Source: Hyphochytrium catenoides (taxonomy: Eukaryota > Protista > Hyphochytriomycota). From it: DNA of 64,000 bases. Positions 13,701 to 33,794 of the stretch are shown piece after piece. The stretch is from the NCBI GenBank assembly GCA_900088475.1, contig FLMG01000972.1, positions 9,183-73,182 of the forward strand, given 5' to 3'. Position numbers and translations under genes: made by a program. The first letter of the stretch is position 1. Every line of letters starts with the position of its first letter. The notes under the pieces are model-generated. The model was not told the DNA's origin, searched no databases, and saw only the letters and a program-made list of their open reading frames with translations.

Positions 13701-16700
13701 GAAGGAGACTAATGAAAGGTAGAAGACACCTCTTTCCCTATCCTCTTGCTCCTCTATTATTCTCTACTTAAGAGCTGCCTTGAAGCTCTTAGTACTTACC
13801 ACCTCTCTCCTCTTCTCCGCGGGATTTTTGACTTCTTACTTTCTTCTCTACTACTCTTTTCCTTCTCTTGCCTTTCTCTTCTCTTGCTCCATCGATACAG
13901 GGATGCGAGACGCACAATTTCGCTACTTCAGACGATGGAGAGAGTATGCGGAGAGGAAGAAGCAGCACAGGATGAAAGTGGCAAGAAGTTGGAATAAGAT
14001 TCTTCGAGCACAGCAGTTCAGAGTAAGTGGGGGGAAAGAGGTCATCTTCTCCTGCATCTCTCATTCTGTTCCTGCCTCTCTCTCTCCGCTTCTTCTTTCC
14101 TTTCTCTCTCTCTCTCCTTCTTTCTCTCTCTCTCTTATCTATCGGTTGTTGATCATTTGGACCCGGCTCTTGCTGCGTTGCCACCATTTCTGCCTAATCG
14201 GACTCTTGTCTTTCTCTCCGCTCGATAAGAGGGGGCCTACATTGTCCCTCTCCTGGTCGCTCACTTCTCTACCAGCTATGGTGTTTCTCTCTTCTTCTTT
14301 TGTCTAGTTGTTCTACCTCATTCTACTGAGTATCATGTCCGCCACATCTTTCAGTAGCTGAACCTCTCTACTCTTTTCTGTGTTGCCCTGATTTCCTTCT
14401 TCTGCTCTTCTGTTATAGTGCTGGACTGCTTGGAAAGACTTCGTGGGCGAGCAGAAGAGGAATCGCCGAGCACTTGCATTCTTTCGCCAAAGGGCAGAGA
14501 AGGATAGCGTGAGGCGATGGAAACAGTTCACTAGGGAAGAAAAGGAGAGAAGAGCCCAGGAGAGAGAAGCAGAAAGAGTAGTGCGTCATTTGAGAGAAAA
14601 CATTGCTGTTGGCCATTGGAAGACTTGGGCGATGGAGAGAGGAAGAGTCAAGAGGAAAGTGAGGGCCACGCTGTCCCTTATATTCCATCGGACACTCTGC
14701 AATACCTTTAAAGCCTGGAGGACAGTGCTTGAGGATCGAGCAGAGAGAGAAAGAGTTCTCGCGAAGCGATGGCAAGAGAAGGAGTTGAAAAGGCTCCTCA
14801 AGACCTGGGTCAGTCATCTGGAACATGTTTGTCTTTGCTCCGTTTCTCATATGCTCCGGGTTTTCTCATTGGATGGCCTCCTCTTGCTCTCTCTCTCTCT
14901 CTCTTCCTAATCTGTCTCACTTCGCTCTCTCCTGCTCTCTCTCTCTCCTTTTCTCTCTCTCTCTTTCTTTTGCTCTCTTTCTCTCTGGCTTTCACCGTCG
15001 CCTTCTATCTGGTAGAATCTTGGCACCGTTCTGGTTCTCATATCCCCTTCTTGTTCTTGACCGTACCAATGGATCTCATATTCTCCCGTGCCAGGACTCT
15101 TTCCTGTGCTTACGAGCAGATTTCCACGTCGGAGCCATGCAGCTCCAAGCTTTCTGGCGAGGGGTGATAGGAAGGAGATACGCAGAGAATTACTATCTAG
15201 AGAGAACTTGGGCAGCAGTTGTGTTCCAGACTATCTGGAGGGGTAGAAGAGCAAGGAGAGAGAGAGAGAAAAAGAAGAGGGAGAGAAGGCTGCAAGACTA
15301 TCTCGCTCAAGAAAGAGAGCAAGACAAGATGGAGAAAGAAGAAGAGCGAATATGGGAGTATCTTAGATTTGAGCGAAAGGTTGCCGTGATACAAGCGTTA
15401 TGGAGAAGGAGAGAGGCACGTAGGCGTTACTATCGAGCTATTGAAGAGCAGAAGAGGCGCCAGAGAGAGAAAGAGATGGAGGAGAAGAAAGAGATACTGC
15501 GGAAGCTCGAAGAGAAGAAGGTAGGAGGAGACGACAATAGATTGAGCAGCAAAATGAGGGCTCTCTCTTACCCTTTCCTTCCTTCTCTTCCTCTCTGTCA
15601 GCTGCGGCTGGAACGCATGGAGAAACTTAAGCATGTTGCCGTGATAGAGGTGCAAAGAGTGGTGAGAGGGTTCCTGGGACGGAGAAGAGCGCAGAGACTG
15701 CGGGAGGACTACTTCGAATCGCAGTGCGCCGCGATGCTACAGGCCGCCTACAGAGGCAGGATCGTCAGAAGGTTGCCCTCTTATAGTTCTTCTCTCGGTC
15801 CCTCCTCGTTGTGGCAGTTGATGGTCTTGATCTTCATCTCTCTCTATTCTCTCTCTCTCTCTTCATCTCTCTCTCTCACTCTCTCGCTCTCCCTCTCTCT
15901 CTCGCTCTCGCTCTGTCTCTCCCTCTCTCTCTCTCTCTCCTTTGCTGTCACTTTCGCTAGTCAAACTGACCACACTGCCCTCTCTGCGTCCCGTCTGCAG
16001 AGCCGTCTACGCCAAGAGGCGACATCGAGTTACCATGCTGCAAGTGGTTCAGAGTCGAAGAGAAGAGGCAACAATTCTCCGAACCATCGGCGCCAAGGAC
16101 AGGAAGGGGCAAAGCCTTGTCCGTTCGTTCTTTGACTCGGTCGGGGCGTCTCCTGAGTCTTTCACCTTTGGCGCTAAGAAAATCCTACGGGACGTAATGG
16201 CTGACTACAAGTTCTTCCGGCGGTGTCTTGAGGAAGAGCTCGAAGTTCTGAGGGAAGGGCTCTTCTCAAAGAGAAGGAGGACTGCCGTGAGAGAGAAATG
16301 GAGAAAGGAAGAAGAGGAGGAAGGACAGGTCCTTCCAAACACTGCTGTCAGAGTAATAATCAGAGGTCATCCTAGGGAAGGAGAGACTGGTAAGATCTCT
16401 CCCCTAACTTACGTCCTCCTTGATGTCTCGCTTCCCCTGCCTGCCTGGGCTTCAGCAACAATATCAGCATCTTCTTATATTCCTCGCTGCCTTACGACCG
16501 ATTCGCCCGCTGACGCCACTAGCCGTCTATCTTCGTCGTTCTCAGGGTATGTTCTTCGTGTGGACATGCGGTCTCGTCCTCCTCTGGCTGAGGTCCGAAT
16601 GGACAGCGATGGAGAGGTGGAGTTCATCCCCATTCTTATGGAAGATACGGACATTATTCAATATAGCAGCATGAAGTACTNNNNNNNNNNNNNNNNNNNN

Positions 16701-19700
16701 NNNNNNNNNNNNNNNNNNNNNNNNNNNNNNNNNNNTCCTTCCATCTGTCTCAGCAGCACTGCTTTTGGTTGCAACGGGAGGCGAAAGCTTGTGACGTAAT
16801 CTAACCTTCCACAGCGTATTGCGTGACACTGCTGTCTTTGCTCTCCTTTCTCTCGTATAAGGGGCATGACTTGAGTCTCCTTTGGGGTCTCTCTCCTCCT
16901 TATTTCTCTCATTTCTCACATCTGATAGAATCCTCTCTTTCGATGCCTGTCCAACAGGTCGACACGATGGATTTCACTGCGATACGCGCTGGAGCCTCTG
17001 CCGACCTAAAGAGCTTCCGCCGCCGGGTAATGGAGTATGCGAGATCGATACGAGAAGACAGGAGGAGAGACAGAGCGGCGAGGGTGATCCAAAGAGCAGC
17101 GAGGGTGATGCACGCCCGGATGAAGGTAAGCTGAGAGGAAGATAGAGCAAGTGGTGAGCGAGAGAGAGAAGAGAGTGTGTGTCACACGGAGGCGTCTCCT
17201 CTGAGTCTCTTAGTTCCTTGTAACGAGGGAGACAACGTGTTGCAATTGTCTTTTTTGCAGCTCTGCAACCTGAAACTTAGCTTTCTTGAGAGATGGCCTC
17301 TAGACAAGTCGAGTCCCGCCATTGCTTGCACCTCTTCTCGCATGCTCACGTCTTGTCTCTGTCTGGTCCTGGCCTTAGGTGGCCGAGGAACGTCTCAAGC
17401 AGGGGACGTTGGTAGCTCGCCGTCAGGCCATTCTTCGGACCGTTCTGCAACATCTCTCCCTTTATAACAATAGAACTGCCAAAATCCTGGCAGAGCTCAA
17501 CCTCGTGCGCGAAGAGTATCTTCCGCCCTCTCTTCCCTCTGAGCCATTGATAATAGAAGCCATAGCAGACAGATTCAGGAGGTTTTTGGCCCGAGAAAGA
17601 GAGAAGAGAGGGAAAGAGGACCAAGATAGCAAGATAGACGAGGTCTTCCGAGGGACGGAAAAGAAGGGAGAAGTCTTAAACGTGCCGGTCCCCTTCCTCA
17701 ACTTTGGCAGGCTTGCGGACGAAGTGTCTCTTAGAATAAAGAGAGCGCCTACGCTTCGGATGGCTACTCTACTGGAAGCGCAAGGGAAGATAGAGGCGGC
17801 GAAGAGGCTAAGAGAGGAGGAGTTTGCATGGGAACACCGAGTAAGGAGACAAAGCAGAAAGAAAATAGGAGAACGTCAAGAATAGCCTCCGTACATCGCC
17901 CTCTCTCCTTATTTGTGCTTGTTCCTTTCTTCTTCTGCTGAGCCAATGTTCGTGCCTTTCAACAATTATCTATTAATCTCTTTGTTCTCTCTTTCTCTCT
18001 CTCGTCAGCCTTTCCTTTGGCCTGTTTTCGCCTTTCCTTCATTCTCTCTATGTCCTAACCAGTACCGTCTCGCTCTTCTGATGACCGCGCAGGAGAAGAG
18101 GATCCGAGTGGGTGCTTATTGCTTTGCTCAGCTTTCTTCTTCTCCTCTCACTCTCTCCGACGGCTGGGCTATTGTCCACAGTCAATGGAAAGATGGTGCC
18201 CCTCACTCTTGGGGAGTAGCCAAATTTCTCTCGGGAGTCGCATTCAATGGAAGGCAGAGGGTGGGCAAACCAGCGGAAACCGGAAAGAAAAGACAGGACC
18301 AGGGCGTGGTGTGGGCAGAGAGAGGAAGCGTGTACGCCAAGTACAAACATATGGCAAAGATGCGGCTTCAAGAGCAACAGGTACCGCTTAAGAGTAGAGA
18401 GCTCGTGGTAGAAAGAGGAAGATGATAGTAAGAGAGATGGGCAACAGAGAGATAGAGAAACATGCACAGATAGGGCAAAGCGAATAAAGATAATGCGAGA
18501 GAGGAGAGGGGCGGCTGGGGAAAGAGCGGAGACATATACATAGAGGAAGCGAGAATGGGCTAGCAGAGGGAAATCAATTGATCAGGAAGAGACACCTTCC
18601 CACATCCACATCATCATCGGCGAGGTCCTTCATACAGCGCAAAGAACTTTAACATGTTTTGCTTGTTTGTCTTCCAGGACAAGCACCAGCGTCTCTCTCT
18701 TCAGTTACTCGTGGCGCACAGTGAATATGTGAGAGCAAGAGAAAAGGAGGGGCCGACCGGTTATGCCATGAGACATCAGCAGCTGTCACTGCAAGAGGAA
18801 GAGCTAAAAGCTGTGTGGGGTCAATTGGTAGAGGCGAAGAAGTCAGAGCGAGAAGAGATGGAGACACTTCTGGCAGCGGTAAGATTATGCCTTTTCTTTC
18901 TTTTTCTGTCCGTCGCTACATGCCTGTTCTTCAGCTCTATGGCTTCTCGTCCTCGTTTGCCCTCTTTGTACCCGAGCTCTCTTCAGCATCTCTCGCTATC
19001 AGGTTGGATGATGATGACTCTTCTCTTTCCTCTTCGTGGCTCTCAGGAGGCAATCGCTGTGGAGAAGCGGAGGAGAGCTATCAAAGAAGTGCTGGAGAGA
19101 GCCAGGCTCTTAGGGAGGTTGCGCGTAGATCCTCCATCTCCTGTCTTTGACTTGAGAGAAGGAGAAATTGCCTCCTTCTCCCTCCCCTTCTATGTCCGTG
19201 CCAAGGGCAATATTGAGGCACAGTGGGACGATGGGAACTGGTATAGAGCACACATCCTATCTCTTCGAAAGGGAGAAGAAGAGGCGCTAGTAGAGTACGA
19301 AGATAACGGTAGCAAGGAGCTCCTCTCTCTCTCCTACAGAGAGGATCTTGAGAGGGAAGGAGGACAGGATAGAGCTCCTAAAGCAGAAGACAAACAGGAG
19401 AGAGAGGAGAAAGAGAGACCTCCCTCAGAAGAGGGTCATACCGATGAAGAGAGACCAAGGAAGCTGATCTGGAGACCGTGGAGAGCGGAAGGAGCCGTAG
19501 AGCTTCTTTGGTCGACTCCTGAGAGCAACGGGGCTCCCATCTCTTACTACACAGTCCGCTGGGTAAATGACAGTGATAGCTCAGATAGAGGAGAGCTCAC
19601 TCTCTCTTTCAAAGACTCTCTTTGTCCTCCTCCTCCCAAGAAGAGGGAAGAGGAGGAGGCAGTCCGGGAGAGAAAAGCGATGACAGATGTTCCTGGTCAC

Positions 19701-20915
19701 GTAAAGCCCTCTTCTGATGAAGAAGAAGAAGAAGATGATGAAGAGTAAGCAAGAGCTGATTGTGTAACTCCTTCCTCCCGTCTCTTCCTCCTTTCTTAGC
19801 TTCCAGTCTAGATACGACGCAAACGAAACAACTGTTCCCAACCTTTGGCGTCTCTTCTACATGCTGACCTTCCTTCCTCTCTTCTCTCTCTGACAGGCCG
19901 CTTGCTGAGCCCATGGATGATGATGATGAAGAAGGCGACGGCGACAGGAGAAGAGAAAGAGAGGAGGGGGGAGAAGAGGGGATCTTCTCCCATCACGCTA
20001 TGGCTTGGCCTCTACGAGTGGACAACCTCTACACCTTCACCATTACATCCACTAACGCTGAGGGAGAGAGCGAGCCCAGCGCTAAGCTTAGGGCAGTGCA
20101 GGCGGAACCGCTAATGTATCGGATGGCAGTGACGAGGAAGCAGGAGCAACAAGAGAGAGAGGAGACAGAGAAGAGACTTCGAGACAGGAAGAGAGAGATG
20201 GAACTGAGAATCATCATCAGACAGAAAAGAGAAGAGAGGCGTTGTGAGATCTGCCGCGAGCTGCAGGTAGAGGAAGCACTTCTTACGGCTCTATCGTTTG
20301 ATCGCACTTGTCCACCTTCTGCTGCCATCTTCTTTAATTGTATGAGTCTTTCCTCTCTCGTGCACTGTTTAGGATATTCAAATGTACATTTATTTGTGTC
20401 TCAAGTGTAAATTTATGTGTGTGCGTGTCTCTCTCTCCTTCTTCGTCTCACTCTCTCCCTTCCTCTGTCCCTCTTTCTCTTTCTCTTTTTTTCTTTTTTT
20501 TGCCCTTTTTCTCTACCTGTGTCTTGTTCTTCTCTCTCTCCCGCCGACTCTCACGTTCAATCTCACTCTTTTGGTTTAAATTTTCCTTCTCCTGCTTCAC
20601 CGTCGCCGCTTTGTTGCCTTCTACCGCCGGTTCTTTCCCTTCCTCCTCTCAAGCCCGACCCAGAGTCAGTGCTGCAGCACGTGCGCACTGCCCACGGCGT
20701 GACTTGGGTCTGTCCATTCTTTCACTGTCGCACGCCCTGCGCCTCTCCAGCCGCCCTCTCCTACCATCTCCGGCACTGCACCGAAACTCTCATGAACGGC
20801 TTCGAGAAAGAGGTATCAAGTCTAGCTAGATATTTATCTAGTTCGCAGTCTCTCTCTCTCCTCTTTCTCTCGCAAAACTCTCCCTCACTCTCTTACTCTC
20901 TCTCTCTCTTCTCTG

Positions 20916-20946
<31 letters not shown>

Positions 20947-23577
20947 TGCTTTCTTTTTTCTTTCTTTTTTACCTTCTATCTTTCTTTTTCTCTTTGTCAT
21001 CCTCTCTCTTTCCTCACCCTCTTTCTCTCTCTCTTCCTCTCTTTAAATCTTGGTTGTCCTTTCTCTCCTTTTGTCCCCAGAATTTTCCCATCTCTGTTCT
21101 CTCTCCTTTTTCTTAGTACTCTCCTATCTTTCGACTCCTTCATTCACGTTTTTTGTCGTAGGATGCGGAGATACAGCGGATATTCCAGCTCTCTCGGCAG
21201 TATTGCAAGCTCAAACGGAAACGTCACCTCCCTCCAACTCTCACTGCTGGAGGCCTAGTAGGGAGAGACGAGGAGCATGAGAGAGAAGAAGAGAGAAGGA
21301 GGAAGGAAGAAGAGTTTTATGATGCGCGCCTAGCTCAGGCTGACGCGGAGGCAGTCAAGCTTTCGCAGGACAGACTTGATAACGCGAAGAGAAGAAGAAT
21401 TGAGAAGAAGGAGAGGAAAGACCGGATCCGTCCTCCCCTATTACCCTCCATCCACAAAGTGCGTTGATCATTTTGTTTCTCTACCTCCCTGTCTTCCTTG
21501 CTGCTCTCTCATTTCAGTGAAGCCCTAAGCAACACTCTGGGGATCTCTTTGCTCTCTTCTTCGCCGTTCTTCCTACCCTGAGAGGCTCTTTCCTCTTGCA
21601 AACAGGACGATACCCTCCTGTCCCCCACTTCTGTCTCACCAGAACCTTGCGTTCCTCTCTCTGTCTCCCTTTTCTCTTTCTTTGTCTCTCTTTCGTGTCT
21701 CTCTGTCTCTCTCTCTCTCCTGTCTTGTTCTCAGTTCACCTGCTTTCCCGTTCTGCATCATGTCTTCCTGGGCGCTAGGTGTCGTACACTACTGAGCAAG
21801 CTGTTAGAGAAGATTGTACGCAAACTGCTGAGGCTCTGGTGGCGGCAGAGAAAGACTTGGAAGCGCTGGGAACGAGTCAGAAGAGAGAGGAGGCCGAACT
21901 CGGGTCTGAAAGGAGAAGGCTTGAGAGCCAACTGCAAGAGTATAGGGCCAAAATGAAGAAGGCAGACGGTGCGATGCCCTTGCTCTTTCCTAATCGTCTT
22001 CTTGTTTCCTCCTCTCTTCCACGGCTCCTCGCTTTCTTCTTCCTCCTTCCCTCATTCTCTTTCTTTCCTACTGCTCGCTCTGCTCGAAGGCTCTCTCTCT
22101 CTCTCTCTCTCCCTCTCTCTCTCTCTCTTTCTCNNNNNNNNNNNNNNNNNNNNNNNNNNNNNNNNNTCTCTCTCTCTCTCTCTCTGTCTGTCTCTCTGTC
22201 TGTCCCTCCCCTCCGCCTGATTCAGGTTCTCCACGTTGCGGATCGACCTCGTCTGCTTTTTTCCTATATGTCTAAATGGCTTGATCTAAGAATATATCCT
22301 CTTCTTGTCTACTTTGAAGGTTATCCGAGTGCCATCTATCTTAGAATAAGCTGCTTGTTGGTTGTCTTCTTTTCCCTTCTATGTTTCCATGGTTCTCCTC
22401 CTCTGTGACCTCTTCTTACCTCTGGGTTGACATAGGTTGGGAGAGAGAGCGATTCGCTCGCGCCAAGAAAGAGGATACAGAGCGGCTGCAAGACGTGGTT
22501 GAGAGGCAAGAGAAAATGGTGGGAGAGTATGAGAAGAAGCGAACGGAACTAGAGAAGCGGATCGCGAACCTCCGCAAGCAGAGAGAAGCACTAACTGAGC
22601 TGTTATCATCAGTCCTCTCCCTAGTTGAGACACAGGGCAAGGTCTCTCTCTGCACTAGGGAGGTTGAAGAGAGAGAAGAAAGGCACATGAGAGAGATATC
22701 TCGCCTGCAGACTCGCCTAGAGGAGCTCATCGGACTCTCCATAGCAGAGGTGAAAAAGCTCGAGATGTGGGAAACAGACTCTCAACGCAAAAGGCTCCAT
22801 CTGGACACTCTGCGAGACCGGCTTCGGAACCTGCAGATGAGGCGGCGCGCGGAAATCACCGGCATCGCTGAGGAAATGGAGCTGCAAGATGCCTATGATC
22901 GCGAGGTCTTCGAAGCGATGACGGAGATTGTGCCAGATCTCAACGGAGCGAGAGGGTATTTAGAGAAAAGAAGAGGAGGTAACGGCCCCGGAGATGTGGA
23001 AAGGATCCTCTCCAACGAAGAGAAGGCAGCCATCCAGCAGAAAGAGTTGGAAGCCTTGCGTCAGGCTGTTGTCTCAGAGGAGAAGGAGGATGGAGAGGAT
23101 GGAAAAGAAGACCATGACGAGAGTCCTCTATCGCCTCCTCCCCCGCCGCCGCCGCCACCTCCTCCGCCTCCAGCAGCGGGAGGCCAAGAAACTTTGAAAG
23201 AGAGACGCGACGGAGAGGCTAGAAATCTTCAGCTATCTCCATTTTTAGACGATGGGAGAGACGAAGAAGGAGGAGAGAGAGCAGCCAACAAACGCTTCTA
23301 CCTCCGTCTGGAGGGAAAGTTTGATCGCGGTAGGATTGCGGGCCAGGTTTACATCGAGTTCACTGACGGAAGCAAGTTTGAAGGTCCCTGGGAGGAGGAT
23401 GTGAGCAGCGTGACTCGTCTCAAAAGAAAGAGGGAAAAAGGCAGCAAAGCCGAGAAGAAGAAAGGAAAGAAGACAGTTCATCACAAGGAAGACGAAGTCT
23501 GGGGCAGGTAGTAGGGACTTGGTGGATCGGCTGCTCAGCCTTGCCGTGGGCTATCTCTCATTCCCCTTCTCTCATAT

Positions 23578-23608
<31 letters not shown>

Positions 23609-26600
23609 GTGTCCCTCTTCTTTCCCCCCTCTGTCTCCCTCTGATCCTTCTCTCTCTGTTGCTTACGTGTCATTGGTCAGTAAGCTGACCTCATCTCACT
23701 TGTCTACATGTGCAGGTGGACCACACCTTCCGGAGACACTTGGGAAGGACTGACAGTTGACAACCACTTTTGCCCAGAGGAGGCACAAGGGGACTTTCTT
23801 CTAACCAGAGCGAATGGTGACCAGTACGATGGCTCGTTCTTTGATGGAAAGGAGAGCGGTTTTGGCACTCTCCTTTTTGGGAAAGAGACACAAGAGAACG
23901 ACAGACTTGCAAGAAGAAAGAGCTCTCTTGTCCCCTCTTCTTCCCTTGCCAGTTCGGGGGAATACTTTGGAGAGTGGCAGAGAGGCAAGAGACATGGTTA
24001 TGGCGTACAGATTCTCTCCAATGGTGAGAGATATGAGGGAGAATGGCAGGAGGGAAGACCACATGGGAAAGGGAAGATTGTCTTCCCAGATGGCTCCTTC
24101 TATGAGGGAGAATATCAAGCAGGAAGATGGAGTGGGAGAGGAAAGAGAGTTTGCGCCAATGGGGACACCTACATAGGCGAGTTCTTAGGGGGAGAAAAAC
24201 ACGGAGAAGGAGAGATGAAGTACGCAGATGGAACAGTGTACGTTGGCGCCTTCTCTCATGACCAGAGACATGGGCCTTTCTCCGTCATGAAGTATGCGGA
24301 TGGAAGTCGGTATGAGGGGCCCTTCAGAGAAGACATGGAAGAGGGAGAGGGCACTCTTTTCTATAAGGAGAAGATAGGCAAAAGTGGAAAAAAAGAGGAG
24401 GTTCTCTCTCGAAAAGGAGTTTGGGAGAAAGGAGCTCTTGTTCGCTGGCTAACTCACCCCATCAGCAGAGAGCTTACGCTGACCTTCGTACAGAATTTCG
24501 GGGTCATCAGGCAGGTGGGAGCCAGGGGAGTCTTTGAGTTTGAGGTGGACCGAAAGCGTCTCCGCTCCGCTTTTTCTCTCCTTGTGGCCTCCAAGCTCCC
24601 CGAGCTACCTCCTGGAGTTGACAAGAGAGATCCCTTCGTTCGGGCCATTGTGCTGCACTTAGCAGCTGCGGAGGAGGAGATGACCGGCTCAAACACGCTA
24701 AAGAAAGTGGTTGAGAGGGCGACAATAGCTGAGGAAGAAGAGAGGCGTGCTGAAGAAGAAGAAGCATCTCTCGCTCTCCAGCGAAAGGAAGCGGAGGCCA
24801 GGCTTAGAGAGGCAGAAGAGCGGCTGCAGGAGGCAACGGACGAGCATGATGCTCTGGTCGGCCGAGAAAGGTACCTGCAAGGAGAGATTGCCATGTTCTG
24901 GAAGCGAGACCCGAAGGTAAGCGTTGAAATAGACTGATGACAGTTCCATTCCGCTGTCGTGTCTGATTAGACTGAGTAGCTAAGCCTAGGATTTGTCTCA
25001 TATCTGGACCTCTCCCATTGTCTCTTCATCACTTTTGCCCTTTCACTCCTTGACGGCGCCTTTGGTTTCATTCCCAGGGCTACGTCAGGGCCTATGAGGA
25101 AGCTGCTAAAAGTCTCAGAGAAGTCAAGCACTCGGAGTGGGAAAAGGTCGGTTCAGTCCTTACGTCTTGCTCTTAAAGCGCTGCGACTACCCTGTTTCTT
25201 CTGAGATGTGCCTCCACCATCGCTCCTTTCCTTACATGGGATATGGAACTAACAAGTCTGATCGGTGTACAGCTTCACAACCCTTTCCTGACGCTTAAAG
25301 TCCTCCTTTATCACCTTTCAGCCACTTCCAGCCTCGTAATATTCTCACCTCTCCCTCTCTTTTGCTTGAATTAGCTTAAAGAGGCGCCGGATAAGTGGCC
25401 CCAGGTGCTCCGTGATGTCCTCTACGGAGTCTGCATACTTCTGAACTACACACGGGAAGTTTACCTCCACGGCAAGCCATACAAGCCCTCTCCAACCGAA
25501 CTCCTTATGATTGTGGCGGACTCTGAGGAAAATGTGGAGCTGGTCAGAGAGATAGTGCTAGAGCCTTGCAGATTCACAGTCACTTCTTAGTTGCCTCTGT
25601 GCCTTGTCTTCATTCTTCCTCTTACCTTCTCCCTCATCCCCTGGCGCTCTTACTCTCCTCCCTTACTCGACATAATTGGCTGACGCAAGTGTGCTGCCTC
25701 CTCTCTCTCATCGCTTCAGGGTGACCTTGAGGGCTTAATACACCATTACCCTGTGAAGGCAGTGTACCTTCTCCCGCTCTTTGATCCTTACTCCTTCTCT
25801 TTCGGCGCGAGGAAGAAGATGCTTGACAGAGTGGCTCAGATTGTGCATAACCCTAAGATCAGACCCAACAATCTTAGCATGACTAAGATCTCCATGGCGG
25901 CCTCGGCTCTAACGCTCTGGCTCAGAGCAGCATTTGCATACGCCTCTGCAGCCTGTAAAATGGCCCCTTATCAGCGAGAGATAGAGCAAATCCAGTTTAA
26001 GGTCCCTAGGAAAGTCAGAGAGAAAGAGGAAAGAGAACATGAAGTGGAAGAGCAGAAGCTTTTTCTGCAGGAGATTGCAGCACGACAAAAAGGCTTCGAG
26101 GAGACGGTGAAGAGCTGCAAAAAAGAGAGGGAAAGCGCCGAAGCTGTTCTTCGCGAGGTAAGCTCAGCCTGGACGATAAGGCCAAGAGGAGCGACAACTA
26201 GAAGGAGCCTTTTTCTCTCTCTCGCTTTCGGTCTTTCCTGTTGATTTTTGATTGACGTTCATTATCTATTTACTGCCATCTTGTATCCGATCTTAGGCTG
26301 AAGAACTCCAGAAGGCAGACAAGTCGGGCCTACCGCGGATTATTCGAAAGGATGCTCTAGACTCCAAGGATTTCACGCAGCAGCTCTACGATGAGGACCT
26401 GAGGAAGATTGAGGAGGAGAAAGAAAGGGAGAGACAGAGACAGCGAGAGATAATGGCCTCTCAGAAAGACAAATGGCAGGCTCTGAAGGTCAATGTGCGC
26501 ATCCTCCTCCGAGCTCGAGGAGGAAAAGTGAAGATGTCAGACTTTCTCGTCCTCTATGCAGAGCAGTTCCAAGAGCGCTTTGATGTTTCTTCCTTTGGCT

Positions 26601-27640
26601 ATAAACGGCTGAGAGACGTCTTGGAGCAGATCAATGATGCTTGCGAGGTGAAAAGGGTCGAAGGTGAAGAAGACGGGGACAAGAAGAGAAAAGATGGTAG
26701 AACAGAGGCAGGAGAAGAAGGTTGGGATGACTATGTTCTCCTCAAAGAAGCCAATGTTCTCCGCTCCTACAGCTGCAAACTCTGCTTAGGGATGGAGTTC
26801 GATACTATTAACGGTCTTCGAAGACACATCCGCACCAAGTGGCACGCTGCTAACATGCAGAGAGAACGAGAAGGGGCAAGAAAGGCAGGACAAAAGGGAG
26901 AAGGAAGAGAAGGCGGAAAAGAGCTTATTGCTTTCTCTCCATCCTGGGTTATGTGGAAGGAGACATACGATGACGGAAGTCTGGAAGTTATTTATAGAAA
27001 TGGAAGCACCGGGGAGATCAGAACTGAGAGACCAGAAGAGATGGACTTCCATGAAGTTAACTGGGTCTTTTCAGAGGAAGAGGTGGAAATGGAGCTGAGT
27101 AGAATGCTCTACAGGGGAGCGGATGGAGAGAAAGAAGGAGGTAAGGAAGAAGAGGCAGTGGTCCAGGGTGAGGACGATGGGGTTCAGGTCGGTGCAGAAG
27201 AGAAGGGATTGCCCACGACTTCGGACAGTTCTGATCCTCCTCTTCCTTCGGGCTGGATAAAAGTCGTTCTACCGCCAGAAAATGGTGGTGGAGAGATAGC
27301 AGCAGGAGAAGGAGGCGCAGAAGCCGCCTACTACTATAACGAGCAAACAGGCGTCTCACAATGGGAGTTGCCGACGATGACAGACGCAATGCACACTACT
27401 AGCGAAGAAGGGCCAGAAGTGGGACAGGACGGAAGATCAAAGGAACCCGATGTAGCAGAGAAAGCGATCTCCTGGCCGGATTCTAGTTCTCCGGGCTTGG
27501 CTCCATCGTCAGGTCCCCTGTATCAACAGCAAGGGACAGAAGATCCGGGAGGGCAGTGGCCTCTGGGCAGTGGCCCGGAGCCTGTTTGGACATGGCAAGA
27601 GCTAGATGAAGCGATGGTGCCAGCGCTCCCTCCCGCTTGA
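7705..27640 (+). CDS. Giant (~4000 aa, ~37 exons) multidomain protein: LRR_CC - IQ - Sfi1-like - IQ - KOW - Tudor - FN3 - C2H2 - coiled coil - MORN - dynein stalk/MTBD-like - LOTUS - C2H2 - WW x2
   Basis: Exons join through phase-compatible GT-AG junctions from ATG 7705 to TGA 27640. Examples: 12831/13052, 18878/19047, 21458/21779, 23507/23716, 24915/25078, 26157/26297. Continuity is least certain around 10100-10920 and across the N gap at 16681-16735. Confidence 0.75.
9030..12600 (+). other. Cys-containing leucine-rich repeat region (FBXL/AMN1 type) of the giant protein
   Basis: Repeats NLSHLDLSRC, LTVLDISECHNI, LRLLNVSGC, ANLSYCTKITDQG, LQTLDISFCSLV, LRSLRLSQCPHL, LYDLDVSGC, LERLDLSGCQTIT, LIELNLWGCSEV. 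Confidence 0.85.
20840..21050 (+). repeat. (CT)n-rich intronic microsatellite; representative of many (e.g. 15838-15940, 28340-28620, 31700-31860, 63900-64000; GA-type at 2820-3250 and 27870-28060)
   Basis: Long imperfect CT/TC runs, often adjacent to the N gaps. Confidence 0.9.
23320..24440 (+). other. MORN repeat array (~10 copies) of the giant protein
   Basis: YFGEWQRGKRHGYG, YEGEWQEGRPHGKG, YEGEYQAGRWSGRG, YIGEFLGGEKHGEG, YVGAFSHDQRHG, YEGPFREDMEEGEG. Confidence 0.92.
25078..25995 (+). other. Dynein heavy-chain stalk microtubule-binding-domain-like segment in the giant protein
   Basis: Three exons read AYEEAAKSLREVKHSEWEK|LKEAPDKWPQVLRDVLYGVCILL...LFDPYSF...NPKIRPNNLSMTKISMAASALTLWLRAAFAYASAACKMAPYQREI. 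This follows the dynein MTBD pattern and is flanked by coiled coils. Confidence 0.75.
26480..27375 (+). other. C-terminal LOTUS/OST-HTH, C2H2 zinc finger and two WW domains of the giant protein
   Basis: LOTUS: VRILLRARGGKVKMSDFLVLYAEQFQERFDVSSFGYKRLRDVLEQI. C2H2: YSCKLCLGMEFDTINGLRRHIRTKWH. WW: ..IYRNGSTGEIRTERP and PPLPSGW...YYYNEQTGVSQWELP. Confidence 0.8.
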
Positions 27641-28186: not shown

Positions 28187-30079
28187 GTCTTACTATTGGA
28201 TCAATATGCAAGTCTGGTTCTGATACCCGGTGGTTCGAGTGGACTTATACTTGTGCATTGAGAGTACTGTTTTACTTTACGTTCTGTGCTTCACTTCTCT
28301 CTCCGCTGCTTTCTCTNNNNNNNNNNNNNNNNNNNNNNNNNNNNNNTCTCTCTCTCTTTTCTTCTTATCTCTCTCTCACTCTTTCTCGCTCTCTCTCTCT
28401 TTTCTTTTTTTCTCTCTCACTCTCACTCTCTTTGTTTCCTTTTCTTTCCTCGTTCCTCTCTCACTCTCACTCTCTTTCTCTTCCTTCTCTCTTCTTGCTC
28501 TTTCTCGTTCTCTCTCTGTCTCTTTCTCTTTTGTGTCTCTCTCTCATGTTCTTCCTCTTTCTCTCTCTCTCTCTCTTTGTCTCTTCCCTTTCTTCCTTGG
28601 TGTAGACCTTCTCCCTCCTTTGTTACCTTCATCCCTCCTTATCTTCTTCTTCTTCTTTCCCTCTGTTTGTCTGTCTTTACACTCTCCCTCTGCAGACGAT
28701 GGGCTCTCTCTTCCTCTGGTCGTAGTACCTTACTACATCTTTACGCTCTCTTGACCGCCTCCCAGGGCAGTTACAAGCGGAAAGTCCTCTCCCATCATGT
28801 TCATCATCTCTTCACTCACCAGTCCTCCGCGCCCAAGAAGAAGCACATGTAGCCTGTCCAGTTCTTAACCTCTTCTTAGCCCGTAGTCCTGCACGCCAAT
28901 TGTAGATGATGTGCCAGAGGTGAGGTGCTTAGGGGGAGGAAATGATAACGCGAAGGAGATTGATCGAGAAGGATCGAAGAAGGGAAAAATGAGAAAGAGG
29001 AGGTAGTTCTATGGCAAAGGAACTTCTCTCTCTCTATATATACATACTATAAATAGATACAAGCATACGTCTCTACGTCGTCTCTCCCTCCTTCTCTCTG
29101 TCTATGTCTCTACGTCTCTCTCTCTATGTCTCTCTCTTAGTATGTGCATTTTAATCGCCCTTTGATGTTTCCCTGTGCGGCTCTAACTCGGGCACCGCCT
29201 CTTTCTCCCTCTCGTTCTCCGTGACAGTTCGTTTCTTATCATAGAAAAAACCTTCTTCGCTTCATCTCCGCCAGTCCTCGAGCCTCTTATTTCTCATTTC
29301 TCTTTTCTTATCTATCTCCTTAACGTCGCCCCTCTCTCTCATGGCCTTTGCCCCTCGTGACTTTGGCTTCTCGACTGACCGTTACTAAGCTGCAAAGTGA
29401 GTTGCCCTTGTCCCTGCCTTTCTGCTTCATGTCTCTCACAGTGCGCCTCAAACCCATTCATCTTTCCACCGGCATCTGCTGTCAGTGGCTGATGCTAACT
29501 CTGTCCGGCATTCCACCTCGCTTCTACTCGACATTATAAGTGCTTAAGCACCAGTCGCCGGGATTGGCAAGCCTACCTCCTCTCACTACATCCTAGTACA
29601 TCTTATAGGTGACTCCAGCAGTCTCCACTTCTTCTTTTCTTCTTTGGCTCTCTTGAGCTTTCACTCTCTCTCCTCTCGTCTCTCAAATGCGCTTGCACTA
29701 GTGCTATCCTTTGCTATAGAAGTTACCTTCGTCTCACAACCTTCATTCAGGGCCACTATCCCACATCAGCCCAGCGTAGTCGTACTGAAGAGTAGCAGCC
29801 AGAGGCTACATAGAGAAAAGATGTCTTCACTTCGATGACTAAACACTTCTGGGGAGGCAGTTGATAGTCTACATCTCGTAGCCCGGTGGTATCTAAGGCG
29901 CGGACCACCTGTCAGACAGATTTCATCCACCATAAGATATGGTCCTGATGTAGAAGGACGCGAGGAATCTTCCTTTTGGAAGTAGACGAAATCACCGTCG
30001 CTTCCTTCCTTTACTCTCTAAACCCTTTCTCTCTCTCTCTCTTTCTGTCCCCCATTCGCTCTCTCCCGTCCGCTCTAGC

Positions 30080-32969
30080 ATGGGCCGGAACGCCAGGTCT
30101 GCTATTGCAGGCTCGGCTACTGAGGTACACGGAACCGTTAGCTCAAAGAAAGTTCACGTGCAGCAGACCCTCTCTTCCTCCGTCCCAGTGACTTACAGCG
30201 GCAGCGTTGCGTCTCCTGACAAAGGATCAAATGGCCGAGGAAAGAGAAGCGATAAGGGGACAGAGAAAGGGTTCTCTTCTGCGGAGCAAAGCACGTTACC
30301 CCGAGTCTTTGTCGGTGATAAACGGCCTCTGAAGTCCCACACAGAGCCGAAGGAAATACACCAGGTCGCAGAGGAACCTCCTCCGGGCCTCGGTAGTCTC
30401 GCTGCAGGCCGAAGTCTCAAACACATTGGCAGGAGGCAGACTGCGACGGTCGTGACAAATGGCGGAGTGAAAGCAGGTGAGGGACATAACGCTTCAGTGG
30501 CGGAAAGAGAAGAGACCGAGAAAGAGGGACCAGGAAAGAGAGAAGAGAGATTAGAGACGAGTGCTATTCATAGCGTCCTCTCAACCCAACTAACCGCCGT
30601 CATTTTACGGGTCTTTGGCTTCACAGGGACCGTTGTTATCGAGGATCCACGCCTTAGGGAGCGCATCCTGGCTGTCTGCTGTAAGACTTGCTTCCTTCAT
30701 CCTTCCTATCCACGTGCCCTCTCTCTCTCTCTTTCAATTTCTCTTGTCCGTCTTCTCTTCTTCTCTCAACTCTCTCTCTTTCCTTGCTCGTCACTCTTTG
30801 CTTTCGAAATGGCCCATGTAGTTTGAGCGTGGCGCTAGTGAGCTTCCACTCTTCTCTCTTCTCTAGTGGTCTCTCATCTTCTTTATCTCCGTCCTGATCT
30901 TTTATGTCCTGTGACTTTCTTTTTGGCCTTGTCTCTCTCTCCATCACTACTGCTGGCCCGCCCTCCGACACTGAGATTCCTTTCTCTTCTCCTGCCCCAA
31001 CTCGGACCAAAACGCCCGTGGTTGACAGTTGAACAGAAGGACTTGCAGGCTATCAAGCAAGCGTTTTTATCTAGAGACGCGGAGTACGTCCCATAGCGCC
31101 CAGCACCTTGACTTTCCCTTCACCCTTCCTGAACTCCTCTCTTCCTTCTCTCTTTCCTGTTTGTTTGCCTTCCTTCCGTCGGTTGACTGTCTCCTTTTCC
31201 TCCCCAGAAACTCTGGCTTCGTAACTGTAAAAGACCTGAAGAAGCTCCTGGACGAGAGTAACGAAGTCTTACTCTCCATGATCTACTCTCTGGCGGGTCT
31301 GTCTGGCTCTCTTCTTTCTCTTACTCCTGTCTCTAGCTCACTCCTTGCTCTGACTTTCTCTTCTAGCTGGCCCTACGCAGGTCTTGCTCTTCATGATCTC
31401 AGCCATTCCTCTCTCTCATTCTCTCCGTCCCATCCTCCTCTCTATGCCTCTGAATCTCTCCTTTCTCTCCGTCTTCGGCAGTTGATTTGTCGGTCGTTCT
31501 CCCGTCTTTGCTAGTCCTCTTCTTCTCTGCAGTTTCTCTTCTGATGGTTGTGTCTCCGCCCAAACTTCTCTCTCTCTCCTTTCCGTTGCTTCATGGCAGT
31601 TGTAAACCCCATCAAGCCGCAGGCCAAGTTGATCAGCTTCCTTCAATTCCTAGAGGTCATTATGAACTTCTGCACGAAGACCAAAGAAGAGATCACGAGA
31701 TGTATGACTCTCTCCTCTGTCTCCTTCTTTCTCTCATCTTTTTTATCTCTCTCTCTCCTTTGCTCTCTCTCTCCCATTCTTTTTCTTTCTCTCGTTTCGT
31801 TCTCTCTCTCTGTGTCTCTCTCTCTTACTCTCTCTCTCCTCTTTCTCTTCTTTTCATTTTTTGCGATGCATCTTGGGCCTTGCCCTTCTTCCCGGGTTCT
31901 TCTGCTGCTTTGGCTACCGGACAGTCTGTCACGTGGGCGTATTTCTTTTCTACCGTGTCCGAGTCCCAAAAGCTTTATTGACCAGCTCTTCTCCTCTCTC
32001 TTCCTCTCGCTGTCAGGGGTCTTTGATTATTATGACGAAAACAAGAATGGCACGCTTGAGGCGGTGCGTTTCCATTGTTCACTATTGATTCAGACGAGTG
32101 AGAGACGCGGATGAAGAGAGAGGAGAAGAGAGAGAGAAGAGAGAGAGAGAGAAAGAGANNNNNNNNNNNNNNNNNNNNNNNNNNNNNNNNNNNNNNNNNN
32201 NNNNNNGAGAGAGAGAGAGAGAGAGAAAGAAAGAGAGAAAGAGAAACAGAAATAACAGGGACAGAGAGAGAAGAGAGAGAGATGGAAAGGAGAAGAAGAG
32301 AATAGAAGATAGGGACTGGAGACCAGTCAGAGAGGGAAGAAAGCAGAAAGCAGGGGAGAAGCAGATACAATGTCTTCAACGATAAAATGAGCACTGCGAA
32401 ACCCTTTCACAGGCCGAAGCAAAAGAGCTGCTTATCATGTTCAGCAAGGATGCTCCGCTTTTTGAGGGCAATCTGGACCGCATGATGAAGATGTTAGACC
32501 AGTACGTGGTCGTAACAATCTCTCCCTCTTTCCTGGCAATGTCACCACTGGCTATTCTCTTCAATTTCTCTCTCTCGCCTCTCGGCTCGATCCCTCTCCT
32601 TTGTCCGCTCTGTTCCTTCTTCTCTAGGCTGTTCCCCGGAGGTCGTAGATAACTCTTCCCTCTCTCTGAGTCTGAAGCCCGTCTTCCCATCGAATAAGTT
32701 TCCTCTTCGTACTCTCTCTCTCTCTTTGCCTCTGATCGCTACGTCTCCACTCCTTGCCTTGTCTCTTCTCTCCCTCGTATAGGAATCGAGACGGAAAGAT
32801 TGACATGACGGAGTTTCTGGAGCTCAGTAACAAGGCTCCGATGGCCTATTATCCCATCTACAGGCTCAGTGAGAACGCCAAGGCCCACACTTTAGGTCAG
32901 AGAGAGTGACGAAGACTGCCGAGAGACAGAAGTGTAGTGGGATACTGACGAAGAGGAAAGAGGAAGAGA

Positions 32970-33542: not shown

Positions 33543-33794
33543 ATATGTGCAAGCTTGACTGATAGGCGAGTGGGAGAGGCAGCGATGTGGAAGAAAGAAG
33601 CGGCCAGATAAAGAGTGAGAGAGAGCTTCAGATGGATTCATAATTCTTAGGCTCTTTCCTACACTTCCCGTAACCAGTGGCTATCAATCTCCTTTCCATA
33701 AGAAAGTAANNNNNNNNNNNNNNNNNNNNNNNNNTCTCTCTCTCTCTCTCTCTCTCCCTTTCTTCTCCCTCGGGGTCTTTTAACTACAGCTTCC

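What the first reader, a model, noticed from the sequence alone, without database searches (positions are those of the whole stretch)
24700..26157. Motor-less dynein stalk and microtubule-binding domain embedded in a non-motor protein
Seen: coiled coil, then AYEEAAKSLREVKHSEWEKLK...WPQVLRDVLYGVCILL...LFDP...NPKIRP...KISMAASALTLWLRAAFAY...MAPYQREI, then a second coiled coil. It is split over three exons, so the ORF track shows only fragments. Established: dynein heavy chains carry CC1-MTBD-CC2 (pattern A..AL..L...DI.ELK..PP..V..V.EAVC.LL ... S.AA..L..WV.A...Y....P) between AAA4 and AAA5. Here the flanks are MORN repeats and LOTUS, and no Walker A/B motifs were seen in the gene. Inference: a co-opted, ATP-independent microtubule anchor, possibly locked in one affinity state. 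Next to MORN repeats it could tether membrane or cargo to microtubules.
Basis: partly seen in the sequence, partly recalled or inferred. Interest (0 to 1): 0.85.

Follow-up and report, generated by a model that had tools for sequence, protein, structure and literature searches.

The report
Dynein microtubule-binding stalk without a motor
A giant multi-domain scaffold protein carries a full-length copy of dynein's coiled-coil stalk and microtubule-binding tip but no ATPase motor; oomycetes have the same arrangement, so it is probably a passive microtubule anchor that I could not find described anywhere.

Summary
Window 24690-26310 (+ strand, exons joined at 24916|25078, 25146|25375, 25542|25720 and 26157|26297) encodes coiled coil, a roughly 170-residue helical domain, then coiled coil.

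It lies between MORN repeats and a LOTUS / zinc-finger / WW tail. No AAA or P-loop module was found anywhere in the gene.

Pfam's PF12777 model does not detect the segment. Four other lines of evidence do show it is a dynein stalk:
- Exon D alone finds dynein heavy chains in 8 of its 9 weak PDB hits.
- A profile of the family finds dynein stalks in 41 of 45 PDB hits (best E 3.7e-9). A profile of the globular core alone finds them in 25 of 26.
- An AlphaFold model of the Saprolegnia orthologue (pLDDT 93.5) matches only dynein stalks at the top of Foldseek.
- The same model aligns with the crystallised "entire stalk" over 251-260 residues (Z 16-18).

The spliced window peptide fits the family profile end to end (E 2.4e-78). 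It is colinear with 2,300-4,200-residue oomycete proteins, none of them annotated as dynein-like.

Microtubule binding, the affinity state and splicing at RNA level remain untested. No paper describing such a module was found. The scan noted a second motor-less copy elsewhere in this genome.

The parts
23716..24424 (+). First part of exon A: MORN repeats. The preceding exon ends at 23507 and supplies two bases of the shared codon.
   Evidence: Pfam MORN E 2.5e-31, 5 stretches. Donor and acceptor read. In the orthologue model this region is a beta sheet.
24425..24689 (+). Conserved pre-stalk element (...LVASKLPELPPGVDKRDPFVRAIV...) at the base of CC1.
   Evidence: Aligned with all family members. 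Its profile finds no dynein and nothing else in the PDB. It is a small alpha/beta unit in the orthologue model.
24690..24916 (+). CC1, the outward arm of the stalk (about 72 residues), ending in the FWKRDPK kink motif. This is the end of exon A.
   Evidence: Family HMM alignment. CC1 is a helix of 72 residues in the orthologue model. It aligns with CC1 of dynein chains.
25078..25146 (+). Exon B: the last turns of CC1 and the start of MTBD helix H1 (GYVRAYEEAAKSLREVKHSEWEK).
   Evidence: AG|GGC acceptor and AAG|GT donor, phase 0. Colinear with the family profile without a gap. No differences in the related metagenomic contig, against 7 substitutions and 1 indel in the adjoining intron.
25375..25542 (+). 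Exon C: H1-H2 (KLKEAPDKWPQVLRDVLYGVCILLN), an insert at the 'flap' position, and the SEENVEL motif.
   Evidence: The donor at 25542|gtcaga was fixed by orthologue alignment. The H1-H2 half aligns with dynein 'D..E.R....PP..V..V.EA.C.LL'.
25720..25968 (+). First part of exon D. It holds a family-specific, highly conserved insert of about 30 residues (GDLEGLIHHYPVKAVYLLPLFDPYSF, 25720-25797), then H5, NPKIRPNN and H6 (SMAASALTLWLRAAFAYASAACKMAP).
   Evidence: Exon D alone against the PDB gives 8 dynein chains among 9 hits, aligned at H6/CC2. The core profile matches DNAH6 2842-2900. 83 of the 100 nearest ESM Atlas clusters carry PF12777.
25969..26157 (+). CC2, the return arm of the stalk, within exon D.
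   Evidence: H6 plus CC2 is a continuous helix of 93 residues in the orthologue model.
26297..27640 (+). Exon E: the last ~4 residues of CC2, a linker coiled coil, LOTUS (~26480-26671), a C2H2 zinc finger (~26768-26845), WW domains (~27329-27373, with one WW-like stretch upstream) and the stop codon at 27638-27640.
   Evidence: Pfam OST-HTH 2.5e-8, WW 3.7e-6, zf-C2H2_4 0.031. Colinear with the C-termini of oomycete orthologues.
24917..25077 (+). Intron A|B.
   Evidence: GTAAGC...CAG; stop codons in all frames.
25147..25374 (+). Intron B|C.
   Evidence: GTCGGT...TAG. 7 substitutions and a 4-base insertion in the related contig.
25543..25719 (+). Intron C|D.
   Evidence: GTCAGA...CAG. The in-frame read-through ends in a stop and has no counterpart in the orthologues.
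26158..26296 (+). Intron D|E.
   Evidence: GTAAGC...TAG. 18 substitutions and 1 indel in the related contig.

Best explanation
Window ~24690-26310 encodes a complete homologue of the dynein heavy-chain stalk. It has an outward helix (CC1, ~72 residues), a helical microtubule-binding domain at the tip, and a return helix (H6 plus CC2, ~90 residues) that pairs antiparallel with CC1.

The module is built into a giant non-motor scaffold. The domain order is LRR, IQ motifs, MORN repeats, pre-stalk element, stalk/MTBD, LOTUS, C2H2 finger, WW; some relatives also have an FN3 domain. This scaffold is conserved between the window's organism and oomycetes.

Shown here: the homology, the predicted fold (on an orthologue), a stalk length equal to dynein's, the absence of any AAA+/P-loop module, and the conservation of the architecture.

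Inferred: the tip binds the microtubule lattice as dynein's MTBD does, holding the scaffold about 10 nm from the microtubule. Because there is no ATPase ring to slide CC1 against CC2, binding would be nucleotide-independent and set by whatever register the conserved base of the stalk imposes. The MORN, IQ, LOTUS, zinc-finger and WW modules would bring membrane, calmodulin-like, RNA/helicase and proline-motif partners to the microtubule.
For: Window exon D alone:
- 8 of its 9 PDB hits at E<=10 are dynein heavy chains aligned at H6/CC2.
- 83 of the 100 nearest ESM Atlas clusters carry PF12777, top score 0.98.

Family profiles against the PDB:
- Profile A1, which includes window exons C and D: 41 of 45 hits are dynein/axonemal heavy chains or isolated stalk constructs. 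The best is the DNAH1 stalk-MTBD crystal 8i3j, E 3.7e-9, with separate colinear matches to CC1/H1-H2 and H6/CC2.
- Globular core without the coiled-coil arms: 25 of 26 hits are dynein, best E 4e-5.

Predicted fold of the orthologue stalk (pLDDT 93.5, pTM 0.75):
- The top 50 Foldseek PDB hits are all dynein heavy chains or stalk constructs.
- VIA-align gives Z 17.7, 16.6 and 16.1 to 8i3j, 3wuq and 5ayh over 260/277, 256/263 and 251/254 residues.
- MTBD-only structures 6rza, 6rzb, 6kjo and 2rr7 are covered almost entirely, at rmsd 3.3-4.2.

The window's gene belongs to this family:
- The spliced window peptide matches a family HMM built without window rows over positions 2-300 of 301 in one gap-free domain, E 2.4e-78.
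- It is colinear with oomycete proteins over ~900-1,000 residues.

No motor:
- Pfam finds no AAA or dynein motor domain in the window's ORFs or in the orthologues (precomputed Pfam).
- No Walker A motif lies in a long forward ORF.

Hallmark positions kept: basic residues in H1, the S-x-A-A...W-[VL]-R-A-A...Y motif of H6, the proline at the H6/CC2 junction, and a break in CC1 at FWKxD where dynein has its CC1 proline.
Against: - Microtubule binding was not and cannot be tested here.
- Identity to dynein MTBDs is only 13-21%.
- Pfam PF12777 does not detect the segment.
- The domain has a ~30-residue, very conserved insert with no dynein counterpart, plus an insert at the flap position, so the binding surface may have changed.
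- The structure was predicted for the Saprolegnia orthologue, which is 37% identical to window exons C and D in alignment A1. It was not predicted for the window's own spliced protein.
- No RNA run was listed, so the exon joins are not shown at transcript level.
Confidence: 0.72

Rival explanations
1. The fold is dynein-derived, but the tip no longer binds microtubules. The conserved family-specific insert (GDKEGLIHxYxVKALYxLPLFDxYSF) and the divergent surface would have been re-purposed for another partner. The stalk would then serve only as a rigid spacer.
For: The most conserved stretch of the family has no counterpart in dynein MTBDs. Overall identity to dynein is only 13-21%. PF12777 fails to detect it.
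Against: The elements dynein uses at the lattice (H1 with basic residues, H6 with the SxAA...W.RA..Y motif, the junction proline) are among the conserved positions. MTBD-only structures bound to microtubules (6rza, 6rzb) align over nearly their whole length.
Confidence: 0.2
2. The stalk is still actively switched. A separate protein, or the conserved pre-stalk element acting with calmodulin on the IQ motifs or under load, changes the CC1/CC2 register. Binding would then be regulated rather than static.
For: The stalk has the same length as dynein's entire stalk. A pre-stalk element is conserved in all three architectures that carry the module. In dynein, the register of the stalk sets the affinity (PMC6629372).
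Against: There is no evidence for any switching partner. The pre-stalk profile matches nothing known.
Confidence: 0.06
3. Chance resemblance of a generic coiled-coil hairpin, or an assembly or annotation artefact such as a dynein pseudogene fragment.
For: Generic antiparallel coiled coils (SMC, Tc toxins, colicin Ia) also reach Z 9-12.7 against the model. The top single-sequence PDB hit was a kinase low-complexity region.
Against: The core-only profile, without coiled-coil arms, still finds dynein in 25 of 26 hits. Dynein stalk constructs stand 3.5-5 Z units above the best unrelated coiled coil (Z 16.1-17.7 against 12.7), and the small MTBD-only constructs are covered almost entirely. The module sits in the same place in more than 40 orthologues. 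In a related metagenomic genome, differences pile up in the introns and not the exons.
Confidence: 0.02

Closest known systems
Dynein heavy chain stalk and MTBD (Pfam PF12777 'MT'; structures 3wuq, 5ayh, 8i3j, 3err, 6rza, 6rzb)
   Same: - Antiparallel CC1/CC2 hairpin of the same length as the crystallised entire stalk.
- Small helical domain at the tip.
- H1-H2 motif (...R/K...V..V.EA.C.LL).
- NP.[FLI].P motif before H6.
- H6 motif S.AA...W[VL]RA..Y, and a proline at the H6/CC2 junction.
   Different: - It is not inserted between AAA4 and AAA5; there is no AAA ring, linker or tail.
- It scores below detection for the Pfam model.
- It has a ~30-residue conserved insert between the 'DENV' motif and H5, and an extra loop at the H2-H3 position.
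- The flanks are MORN repeats and LOTUS.
Single-headed inner-arm axonemal dyneins with a 'flap' between H2 and H3 (DNAH1, DNAH3, DNAH6, DNAH7; PMC6629372)
   Same: These give the best sequence hits (DNAH1, DNAH6, DNAH3, Chlamydomonas DHC2, DNAH7). Cytoplasmic dynein-2 scores only E 0.6-0.9. The family also has extra residues at the H2-H3 position, enlarged by ~30 residues in Phytophthora and Plasmopara.
   Different: The insert is predicted as a loop or short helix, not a beta hairpin. No phylogeny was made, so descent from this dynein class is only a lead.
Shorter motor-less proteins with the same module (AFDB cluster A0A2R5GCU6 'Radial spoke head 10-like B', 1,021 aa; P0016/P0060 ~1,150 aa; P0014 group ~470-510 aa)
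   Same: Pre-stalk element plus CC1-MTBD-CC2. The AFDB entry gives TM 0.88 and E 3.6e-13 against the model. MORN repeats lie upstream in P0016/P0060, and a WW domain lies downstream in the P0014 group.
   Different: They lack the LRR, IQ, LOTUS and zinc-finger parts. Identity to the giant family in the module is only 20-38%. None is annotated as dynein-like.
Engineered seryl-tRNA-synthetase-MTBD fusions (3err; used in PMC6629372)
   Same: Here a dynein MTBD sits on a foreign coiled-coil base without any motor. [quoted passage not shown] This is the laboratory analogue of what the natural protein appears to be.
   Different: These are artificial and have a short stalk. The natural module keeps the full stalk and has its own conserved base.

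Membership tests
Dynein heavy chain (motor protein) | Six AAA+ modules with P-loops forming the motor ring | tested here: not met
   No AAA or dynein motor Pfam family in the window's ORFs or in orthologues. No Walker A motif in long forward ORFs between 7000 and 27700.
Dynein heavy chain (motor protein) | Stalk inserted between AAA4 and AAA5 | tested here: not met
   The stalk is flanked by MORN repeats plus a pre-stalk element upstream and by LOTUS downstream. The pre-stalk profile finds no dynein.
Dynein stalk/MTBD domain (PF12777 'MT') | Match to the Pfam model at or above its gathering score | tested here: not met
   No PF12777 hit for the window exon pieces at E<=1, or for any of the 14 members of A1 at E<=10. 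The pieces were searched separately because the spliced peptide has no reference.
Dynein stalk/MTBD domain (PF12777 'MT') | Significant, colinear sequence similarity to bona fide dynein stalks | tested here: met
   Family profile: 41 of 45 PDB hits are dynein, best E 3.7e-9. Core only: 25 of 26, best E 4e-5. Window exon D alone: 8 of 9.
Dynein stalk/MTBD domain (PF12777 'MT') | Antiparallel coiled-coil hairpin with a small helical bundle at the tip | tested here: met
   The AF2 model of the orthologue has pLDDT 93.5. The Foldseek top 50 are all dynein. Z is 16-18 to entire-stalk crystals. The model is of the orthologue, not of the window protein itself.
Dynein stalk/MTBD domain (PF12777 'MT') | Proline at the H6/CC2 junction and a kink in CC1 next to the MTBD | tested here: met
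   A nearly invariant proline (KMAP in the window) and a helix break at FWKxD(P).
Dynein stalk/MTBD domain (PF12777 'MT') | Binds microtubules, with affinity set by the coiled-coil register | not testable with these tools
   Needs co-sedimentation, TIRF or cryo-EM.
MORN-repeat proteins | Tandem MORN repeats (PF02493) | tested here: met
   E 2.5e-31, 5 stretches in 23708-24916.
LOTUS/OST-HTH proteins | OST-HTH domain (PF12872) above the gathering score | tested here: met
   34.1 bits against a cut-off of 23.8, E 2.5e-8.

The most novel reading that the evidence does not exclude
The module is not a dead relic but a nucleotide-free, switchable microtubule clutch. The full-length stalk and its conserved base (the pre-stalk element plus the strand after CC2) would replace the AAA ring as the device that sets the CC1/CC2 register. 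Microtubule affinity would then be controlled by calmodulin on the IQ motifs, by membrane binding of MORN, or by load, coupling an RNA- and membrane-binding scaffold reversibly to microtubules. A more radical version is not excluded because no phylogeny was made: this lineage could preserve a free-standing form of the stalk older than its insertion into the dynein ring.
Probability: 0.12. Interest if true: 0.9.

Novelty: new variant of a known kind. Interest (0 to 1): 0.75.

Why it matters
The stalk and MTBD are treated as a signature of dynein heavy chains, and their behaviour has been studied only as part of the motor or in artificial fusions. A natural, conserved, motor-less copy would matter in four ways:
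- It would show that this device can work as a stand-alone microtubule-binding module.
- It would give a natural test case for how coiled-coil register and affinity are coupled without ATP.
- It would identify a microtubule-linked giant scaffold that combines membrane (MORN), calmodulin (IQ) and RNA-granule-type (LOTUS, zinc-finger, WW) modules. This scaffold occurs in oomycetes and in the window's organism, where the proteins are annotated only as hypothetical, LRR or WW proteins.
- It would show a blind spot of the Pfam model.

Tried and rejected
- Pfam on the separate exon pieces and on 14 family segments gave no PF12777 hit, only coiled-coil noise.
- Exon C alone against the PDB gave no hit.
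- RNA evidence: no RNA run was listed. The three tiny runs of the same species label laid nothing on the stretch, and only a metagenomic DNA relative did.
- Two homologue searches meant to widen the taxonomic range (P0016 region, P0010 region) returned only the query itself or two more oomycete/metagenome proteins. No named apicomplexan or other non-oomycete orthologue was obtained, and the window's own annotated protein was not found.
- Cluster look-up gave no taxonomy for the metagenomic members.
- The pre-stalk element was tested for a hidden dynein AAA4 remnant, and none was found.
- An ESM Atlas search with the dynein families left out gave only scores below 0.8.
- Eight literature searches found no description of a motor-less dynein MTBD. 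The terms covered MTBD-like, dynein stalk-like, PF12777/IPR024743, MORN+MTBD, MORN+coiled-coil stalk, LOTUS+MORN+oomycete and 'lacks the motor'.
It was analysed only in the local script.
Full report
**What is in the sequence.** The window looks like a eukaryotic, intron-rich locus of about 50% GC. It has CT-rich introns and a few runs of N. On the + strand the region 22381-27640 holds a chain of long ORFs. By reading the three forward frames and the splice signals I joined these exons:
- an exon ending at 23507;
- exon A, 23716-24916;
- exon B, 25078-25146;
- exon C, 25375-25542;
- exon D, 25720-26157;
- exon E, 26297-27640.

All the B-E junctions are GT..AG and phase 0. The donor of exon C (gtcaga) could not be chosen from the DNA alone. 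It was fixed by the orthologues, whose sequence runs ...ENV.L|GD.EGLIH... without a break.

**The flanks.**
- Pfam finds five MORN stretches (E 2.5e-31) in exon A.
- It finds OST-HTH/LOTUS (2.5e-8), a weak C2H2 finger and a WW domain (3.7e-6) in exon E.
- Further upstream, ORFs on the same strand carry LRR and IQ motifs.
- No AAA or dynein motor family is found.
- The only two matches to the Walker A pattern in the forward frames of 7000-27700 lie in ORFs of 22 and 37 codons.

**Is the middle piece dynein-like?**
- *Pfam says no.* PF12777 does not appear for the exon pieces or for any of 14 family segments, even at E<=10.
- *Exon D alone.* Searched against all PDB sequences, it gives 9 hits at E<=10. 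Eight are dynein heavy chains, all aligned at the same place, H6 of the MTBD running into CC2. An example is T. brucei IDAf-alpha 3308-3388, E 0.0078.
- *Language-model features.* The features of exon D put it among PF12777-bearing clusters for 83 of its 100 nearest neighbours, with a top score of 0.98.

**The family.** An exhaustive phmmer search with the MTBD half of exon D found only 18 proteins at E<=1e-3 among 1.84 billion representatives. Most are 2,500-3,900 residues long, with the match near the C-terminus.

Their Pfam content is LRR, IQ, sometimes FN3, MORN, LOTUS and WW, with no AAA domain. A word-based search from one of them returned 40 proteins of 2,300-4,200 residues, nearly all from oomycetes: Phytophthora, Pythium, Globisporangium, Saprolegnia, Aphanomyces, Achlya, Plasmopara and Lagenidium. 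They are named 'hypothetical', 'leucine rich repeat', 'WW domain-containing' or 'OST-HTH/LOTUS'. Their precomputed Pfam lists lack PF12777 and every dynein motor family.

The window's spliced peptide (exons A-E, 1,075 residues) is colinear with these proteins over ~900-1,000 residues at about 31% identity. It also matches a profile built from the family without any window row over positions 2-300 of 301, in one domain with no gap at any exon junction, E 2.4e-78. So the exon model is right by homology, and MORN, stalk and LOTUS belong to one protein in every member.

**Homology to dynein at family level.**
- *Stalk profile.* A profile of 12 family stalk segments plus window exons C and D (A1) was searched against the PDB. 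It gives 45 hits at E<=1, and 41 are dynein/axonemal heavy chains or isolated stalk constructs.
- *Best hit.* The best is the DNAH1 stalk-MTBD crystal 8i3j at E 3.7e-9. It has two colinear matches, one to CC1/H1-H2 and one to H6/CC2.
- *Core-only profile.* To exclude a coiled-coil composition effect I repeated the search with the globular core only (FWK... to the junction proline, A4). Of 26 hits, 25 are dynein, best E 4e-5. These also come in two colinear parts, covering DNAH6 2767-2844 and 2842-2900.
- *Which dyneins.* The strongest hits are single-headed inner-arm dyneins (DNAH1, 6, 3, 7, Chlamydomonas DHC2). Cytoplasmic dynein-2 reaches only E 0.6-0.9.

**Fold.** AlphaFold2 on the Saprolegnia diclina orthologue segment P0007:3024-3324, using alignment A1, gave pLDDT 93.5 and pTM 0.75. 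The model has a 68-residue helix, a helical globule (residues 75-207) and a 90-residue helix.
- *Foldseek against the PDB.* The top 50 are all dynein heavy chains or stalk constructs, probability 1.00.
- *VIA-align.* It gives Z 17.7, 16.6 and 16.1 to 8i3j, 3wuq and 5ayh. These are the crystallised 'entire stalk' constructs, and they are aligned over 260/277, 256/263 and 251/254 of their residues.
- *MTBD-only structures.* They are covered almost completely: 6rza (DNAH7 on microtubules) 146/163 at rmsd 3.3; 6rzb (dynein-1 on microtubules) 145/149; 6kjo 137/141; 2rr7 134/155.
- *Unrelated coiled coils.* Antiparallel coiled coils of other proteins start at Z 12.7.
- *ESM Atlas by shape.* This search also puts PF12777 fragments first.

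A second model covered the whole C-terminal 964 residues of the same orthologue (pLDDT 81.9). In order it shows a MORN sheet, a small alpha/beta pre-stalk unit, CC1 (72 residues), the MTBD (~130 residues), H6 plus CC2 (93 residues), a short strand, more helix, LOTUS, a zinc finger and WW domains. The stalk is therefore not a stump. It has the length of dynein's complete stalk.

**How it differs from dynein.**
1. There is no motor and no AAA4/AAA5 remnant. A profile of the conserved pre-stalk element (KFxTPYAVMVAxxLPxLPxGVDxxDxFV; window ~24425-24689) finds nothing in the PDB.
2. About 30 residues, GDKEGLIHxYxVKALYxLPLFDxYSF (window 25720-25797), have no counterpart in the dynein alignments, yet they are the best-conserved stretch of the family.
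3. There are extra residues at the H2-H3 position, where some axonemal dyneins carry the 'flap' that touches the neighbouring protofilament (PMC6629372). Phytophthora and Plasmopara add ~30 charged residues there.
4. Oomycete members lack the PP of dynein's H1-H2 turn, whereas the window keeps prolines there (APDKWPQV).

What is kept:
- basic residues in H1 (W-Y-[KR]-L-[RK]-x-A-K; KLKEA in the window);
- the NP.[LI]RP motif;
- S.AA...W[VL]RAA..Y in H6;
- the junction proline;
- a helix break in CC1 at FWKxD, where dynein has its CC1 proline.

**Other motor-less carriers.** The best AlphaFold-DB cluster hit is not a dynein fragment. It is a 1,021-residue protein named 'Radial spoke head 10-like B', matched at residues 253-545 with TM 0.88 and E 3.6e-13. 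Metagenomic proteins of ~1,150 residues (P0016, P0060) combine MORN with the module. A group of 467-507-residue proteins (P0014, P0053-59) combines the module with a WW domain. An earlier first-stage note of this scan (s1-336176) reports another motor-less MTBD on another piece of the same genome; I did not check it.

**Support for the exon model from a relative.** No RNA run was listed. A metagenome run holds contigs of a close relative. Over the stretch it shows 3 differences in about 440 exonic bases, two of them synonymous by my reading of the codons. In about 325 intronic bases it shows about 25 substitutions and two indels. This fits the exon boundaries and purifying selection, but it is not transcript evidence.

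**Mechanism.**
- *Shown:* a dynein-homologous, full-length stalk with an MTBD-like tip, embedded in a conserved non-motor scaffold.
- *Inferred:* the tip binds the microtubule lattice as dynein does. With no AAA ring, the CC1/CC2 register is fixed or is set by the conserved base, so binding is nucleotide-independent. The rest of the protein brings membrane (MORN), calmodulin-like (IQ), RNA/helicase (LOTUS, zinc finger) and PPxY-type (WW) partners to microtubules.

I put about 0.95 on the homology and fold, and about 0.7 on microtubule binding. The main rival (0.2) is that the fold was kept while the tip, with its conserved insert, now binds something else.

**Novelty.** Eight full-text searches found no description of a dynein stalk/MTBD outside dynein heavy chains. 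None of the named orthologues is annotated that way. I could not check InterPro/Gene3D annotations, and most subscription journals are outside the library, so prior knowledge cannot be excluded. I class the finding as a new variant of a known kind: a known domain in a new, conserved, motor-less context.

Noticed in passing
window 25720-25797: The best-conserved stretch of the whole family (GDxEGLIHxYxVKAxYxLPLFDxYSF) is an insert with no counterpart in dynein MTBDs. Its role is unknown; it could be an extra tubulin contact or a partner site.
   Followed up: partly
window 24425-24689: A pre-stalk element (...LPELPPGVDKRDPFVRAIV...) is conserved in all three protein architectures that carry the motor-less stalk. 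Its profile matches nothing in the PDB.
   Followed up: partly
P0012, P0029-P0047 (Phytophthora, Nothophytophthora, Plasmopara), e.g. P0012:3345-3405: A lineage-specific charged insert of ~30 residues (ELEEKEKREKLAKYE...) sits exactly at the H2-H3 position, where axonemal dyneins carry the 'flap'.
   Followed up: no
window 11396-20410 (+ strand): Upstream ORFs on the same strand carry LRR (11396-12085) and IQ (14825-16132) motifs, a weak Agenet/Tudor-like hit and an FN3-like stretch (18654-19745). I did not build the exon model for that part.
   Followed up: partly
window 25076-26332, run X3: A metagenome holds a close relative of this genome. Differences are ~0.7% in the predicted exons against ~8% plus indels in the introns.
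   Followed up: partly
window 1689-1702, 16681-16735, 22134-22166, 28317-28346, 32159-32206, 33710-33734, 44741-44798: Seven short runs of N. The three whose flanks I saw (22134-22166, 28317-28346, 32159-32206) lie inside CT/GA-rich low-complexity stretches. They are assembly gaps or masked repeats, and none touches the stalk exons.
   Followed up: no
AFDB A0A2R5GCU6 residues 253-545; P0016, P0060, P0014, P0053-P0059: At least two further, shorter motor-less families carry the same stalk module: MORN plus stalk (~1,000-1,200 aa) and stalk plus WW (~470-510 aa). They are unannotated apart from a MORN-derived name.
   Followed up: partly
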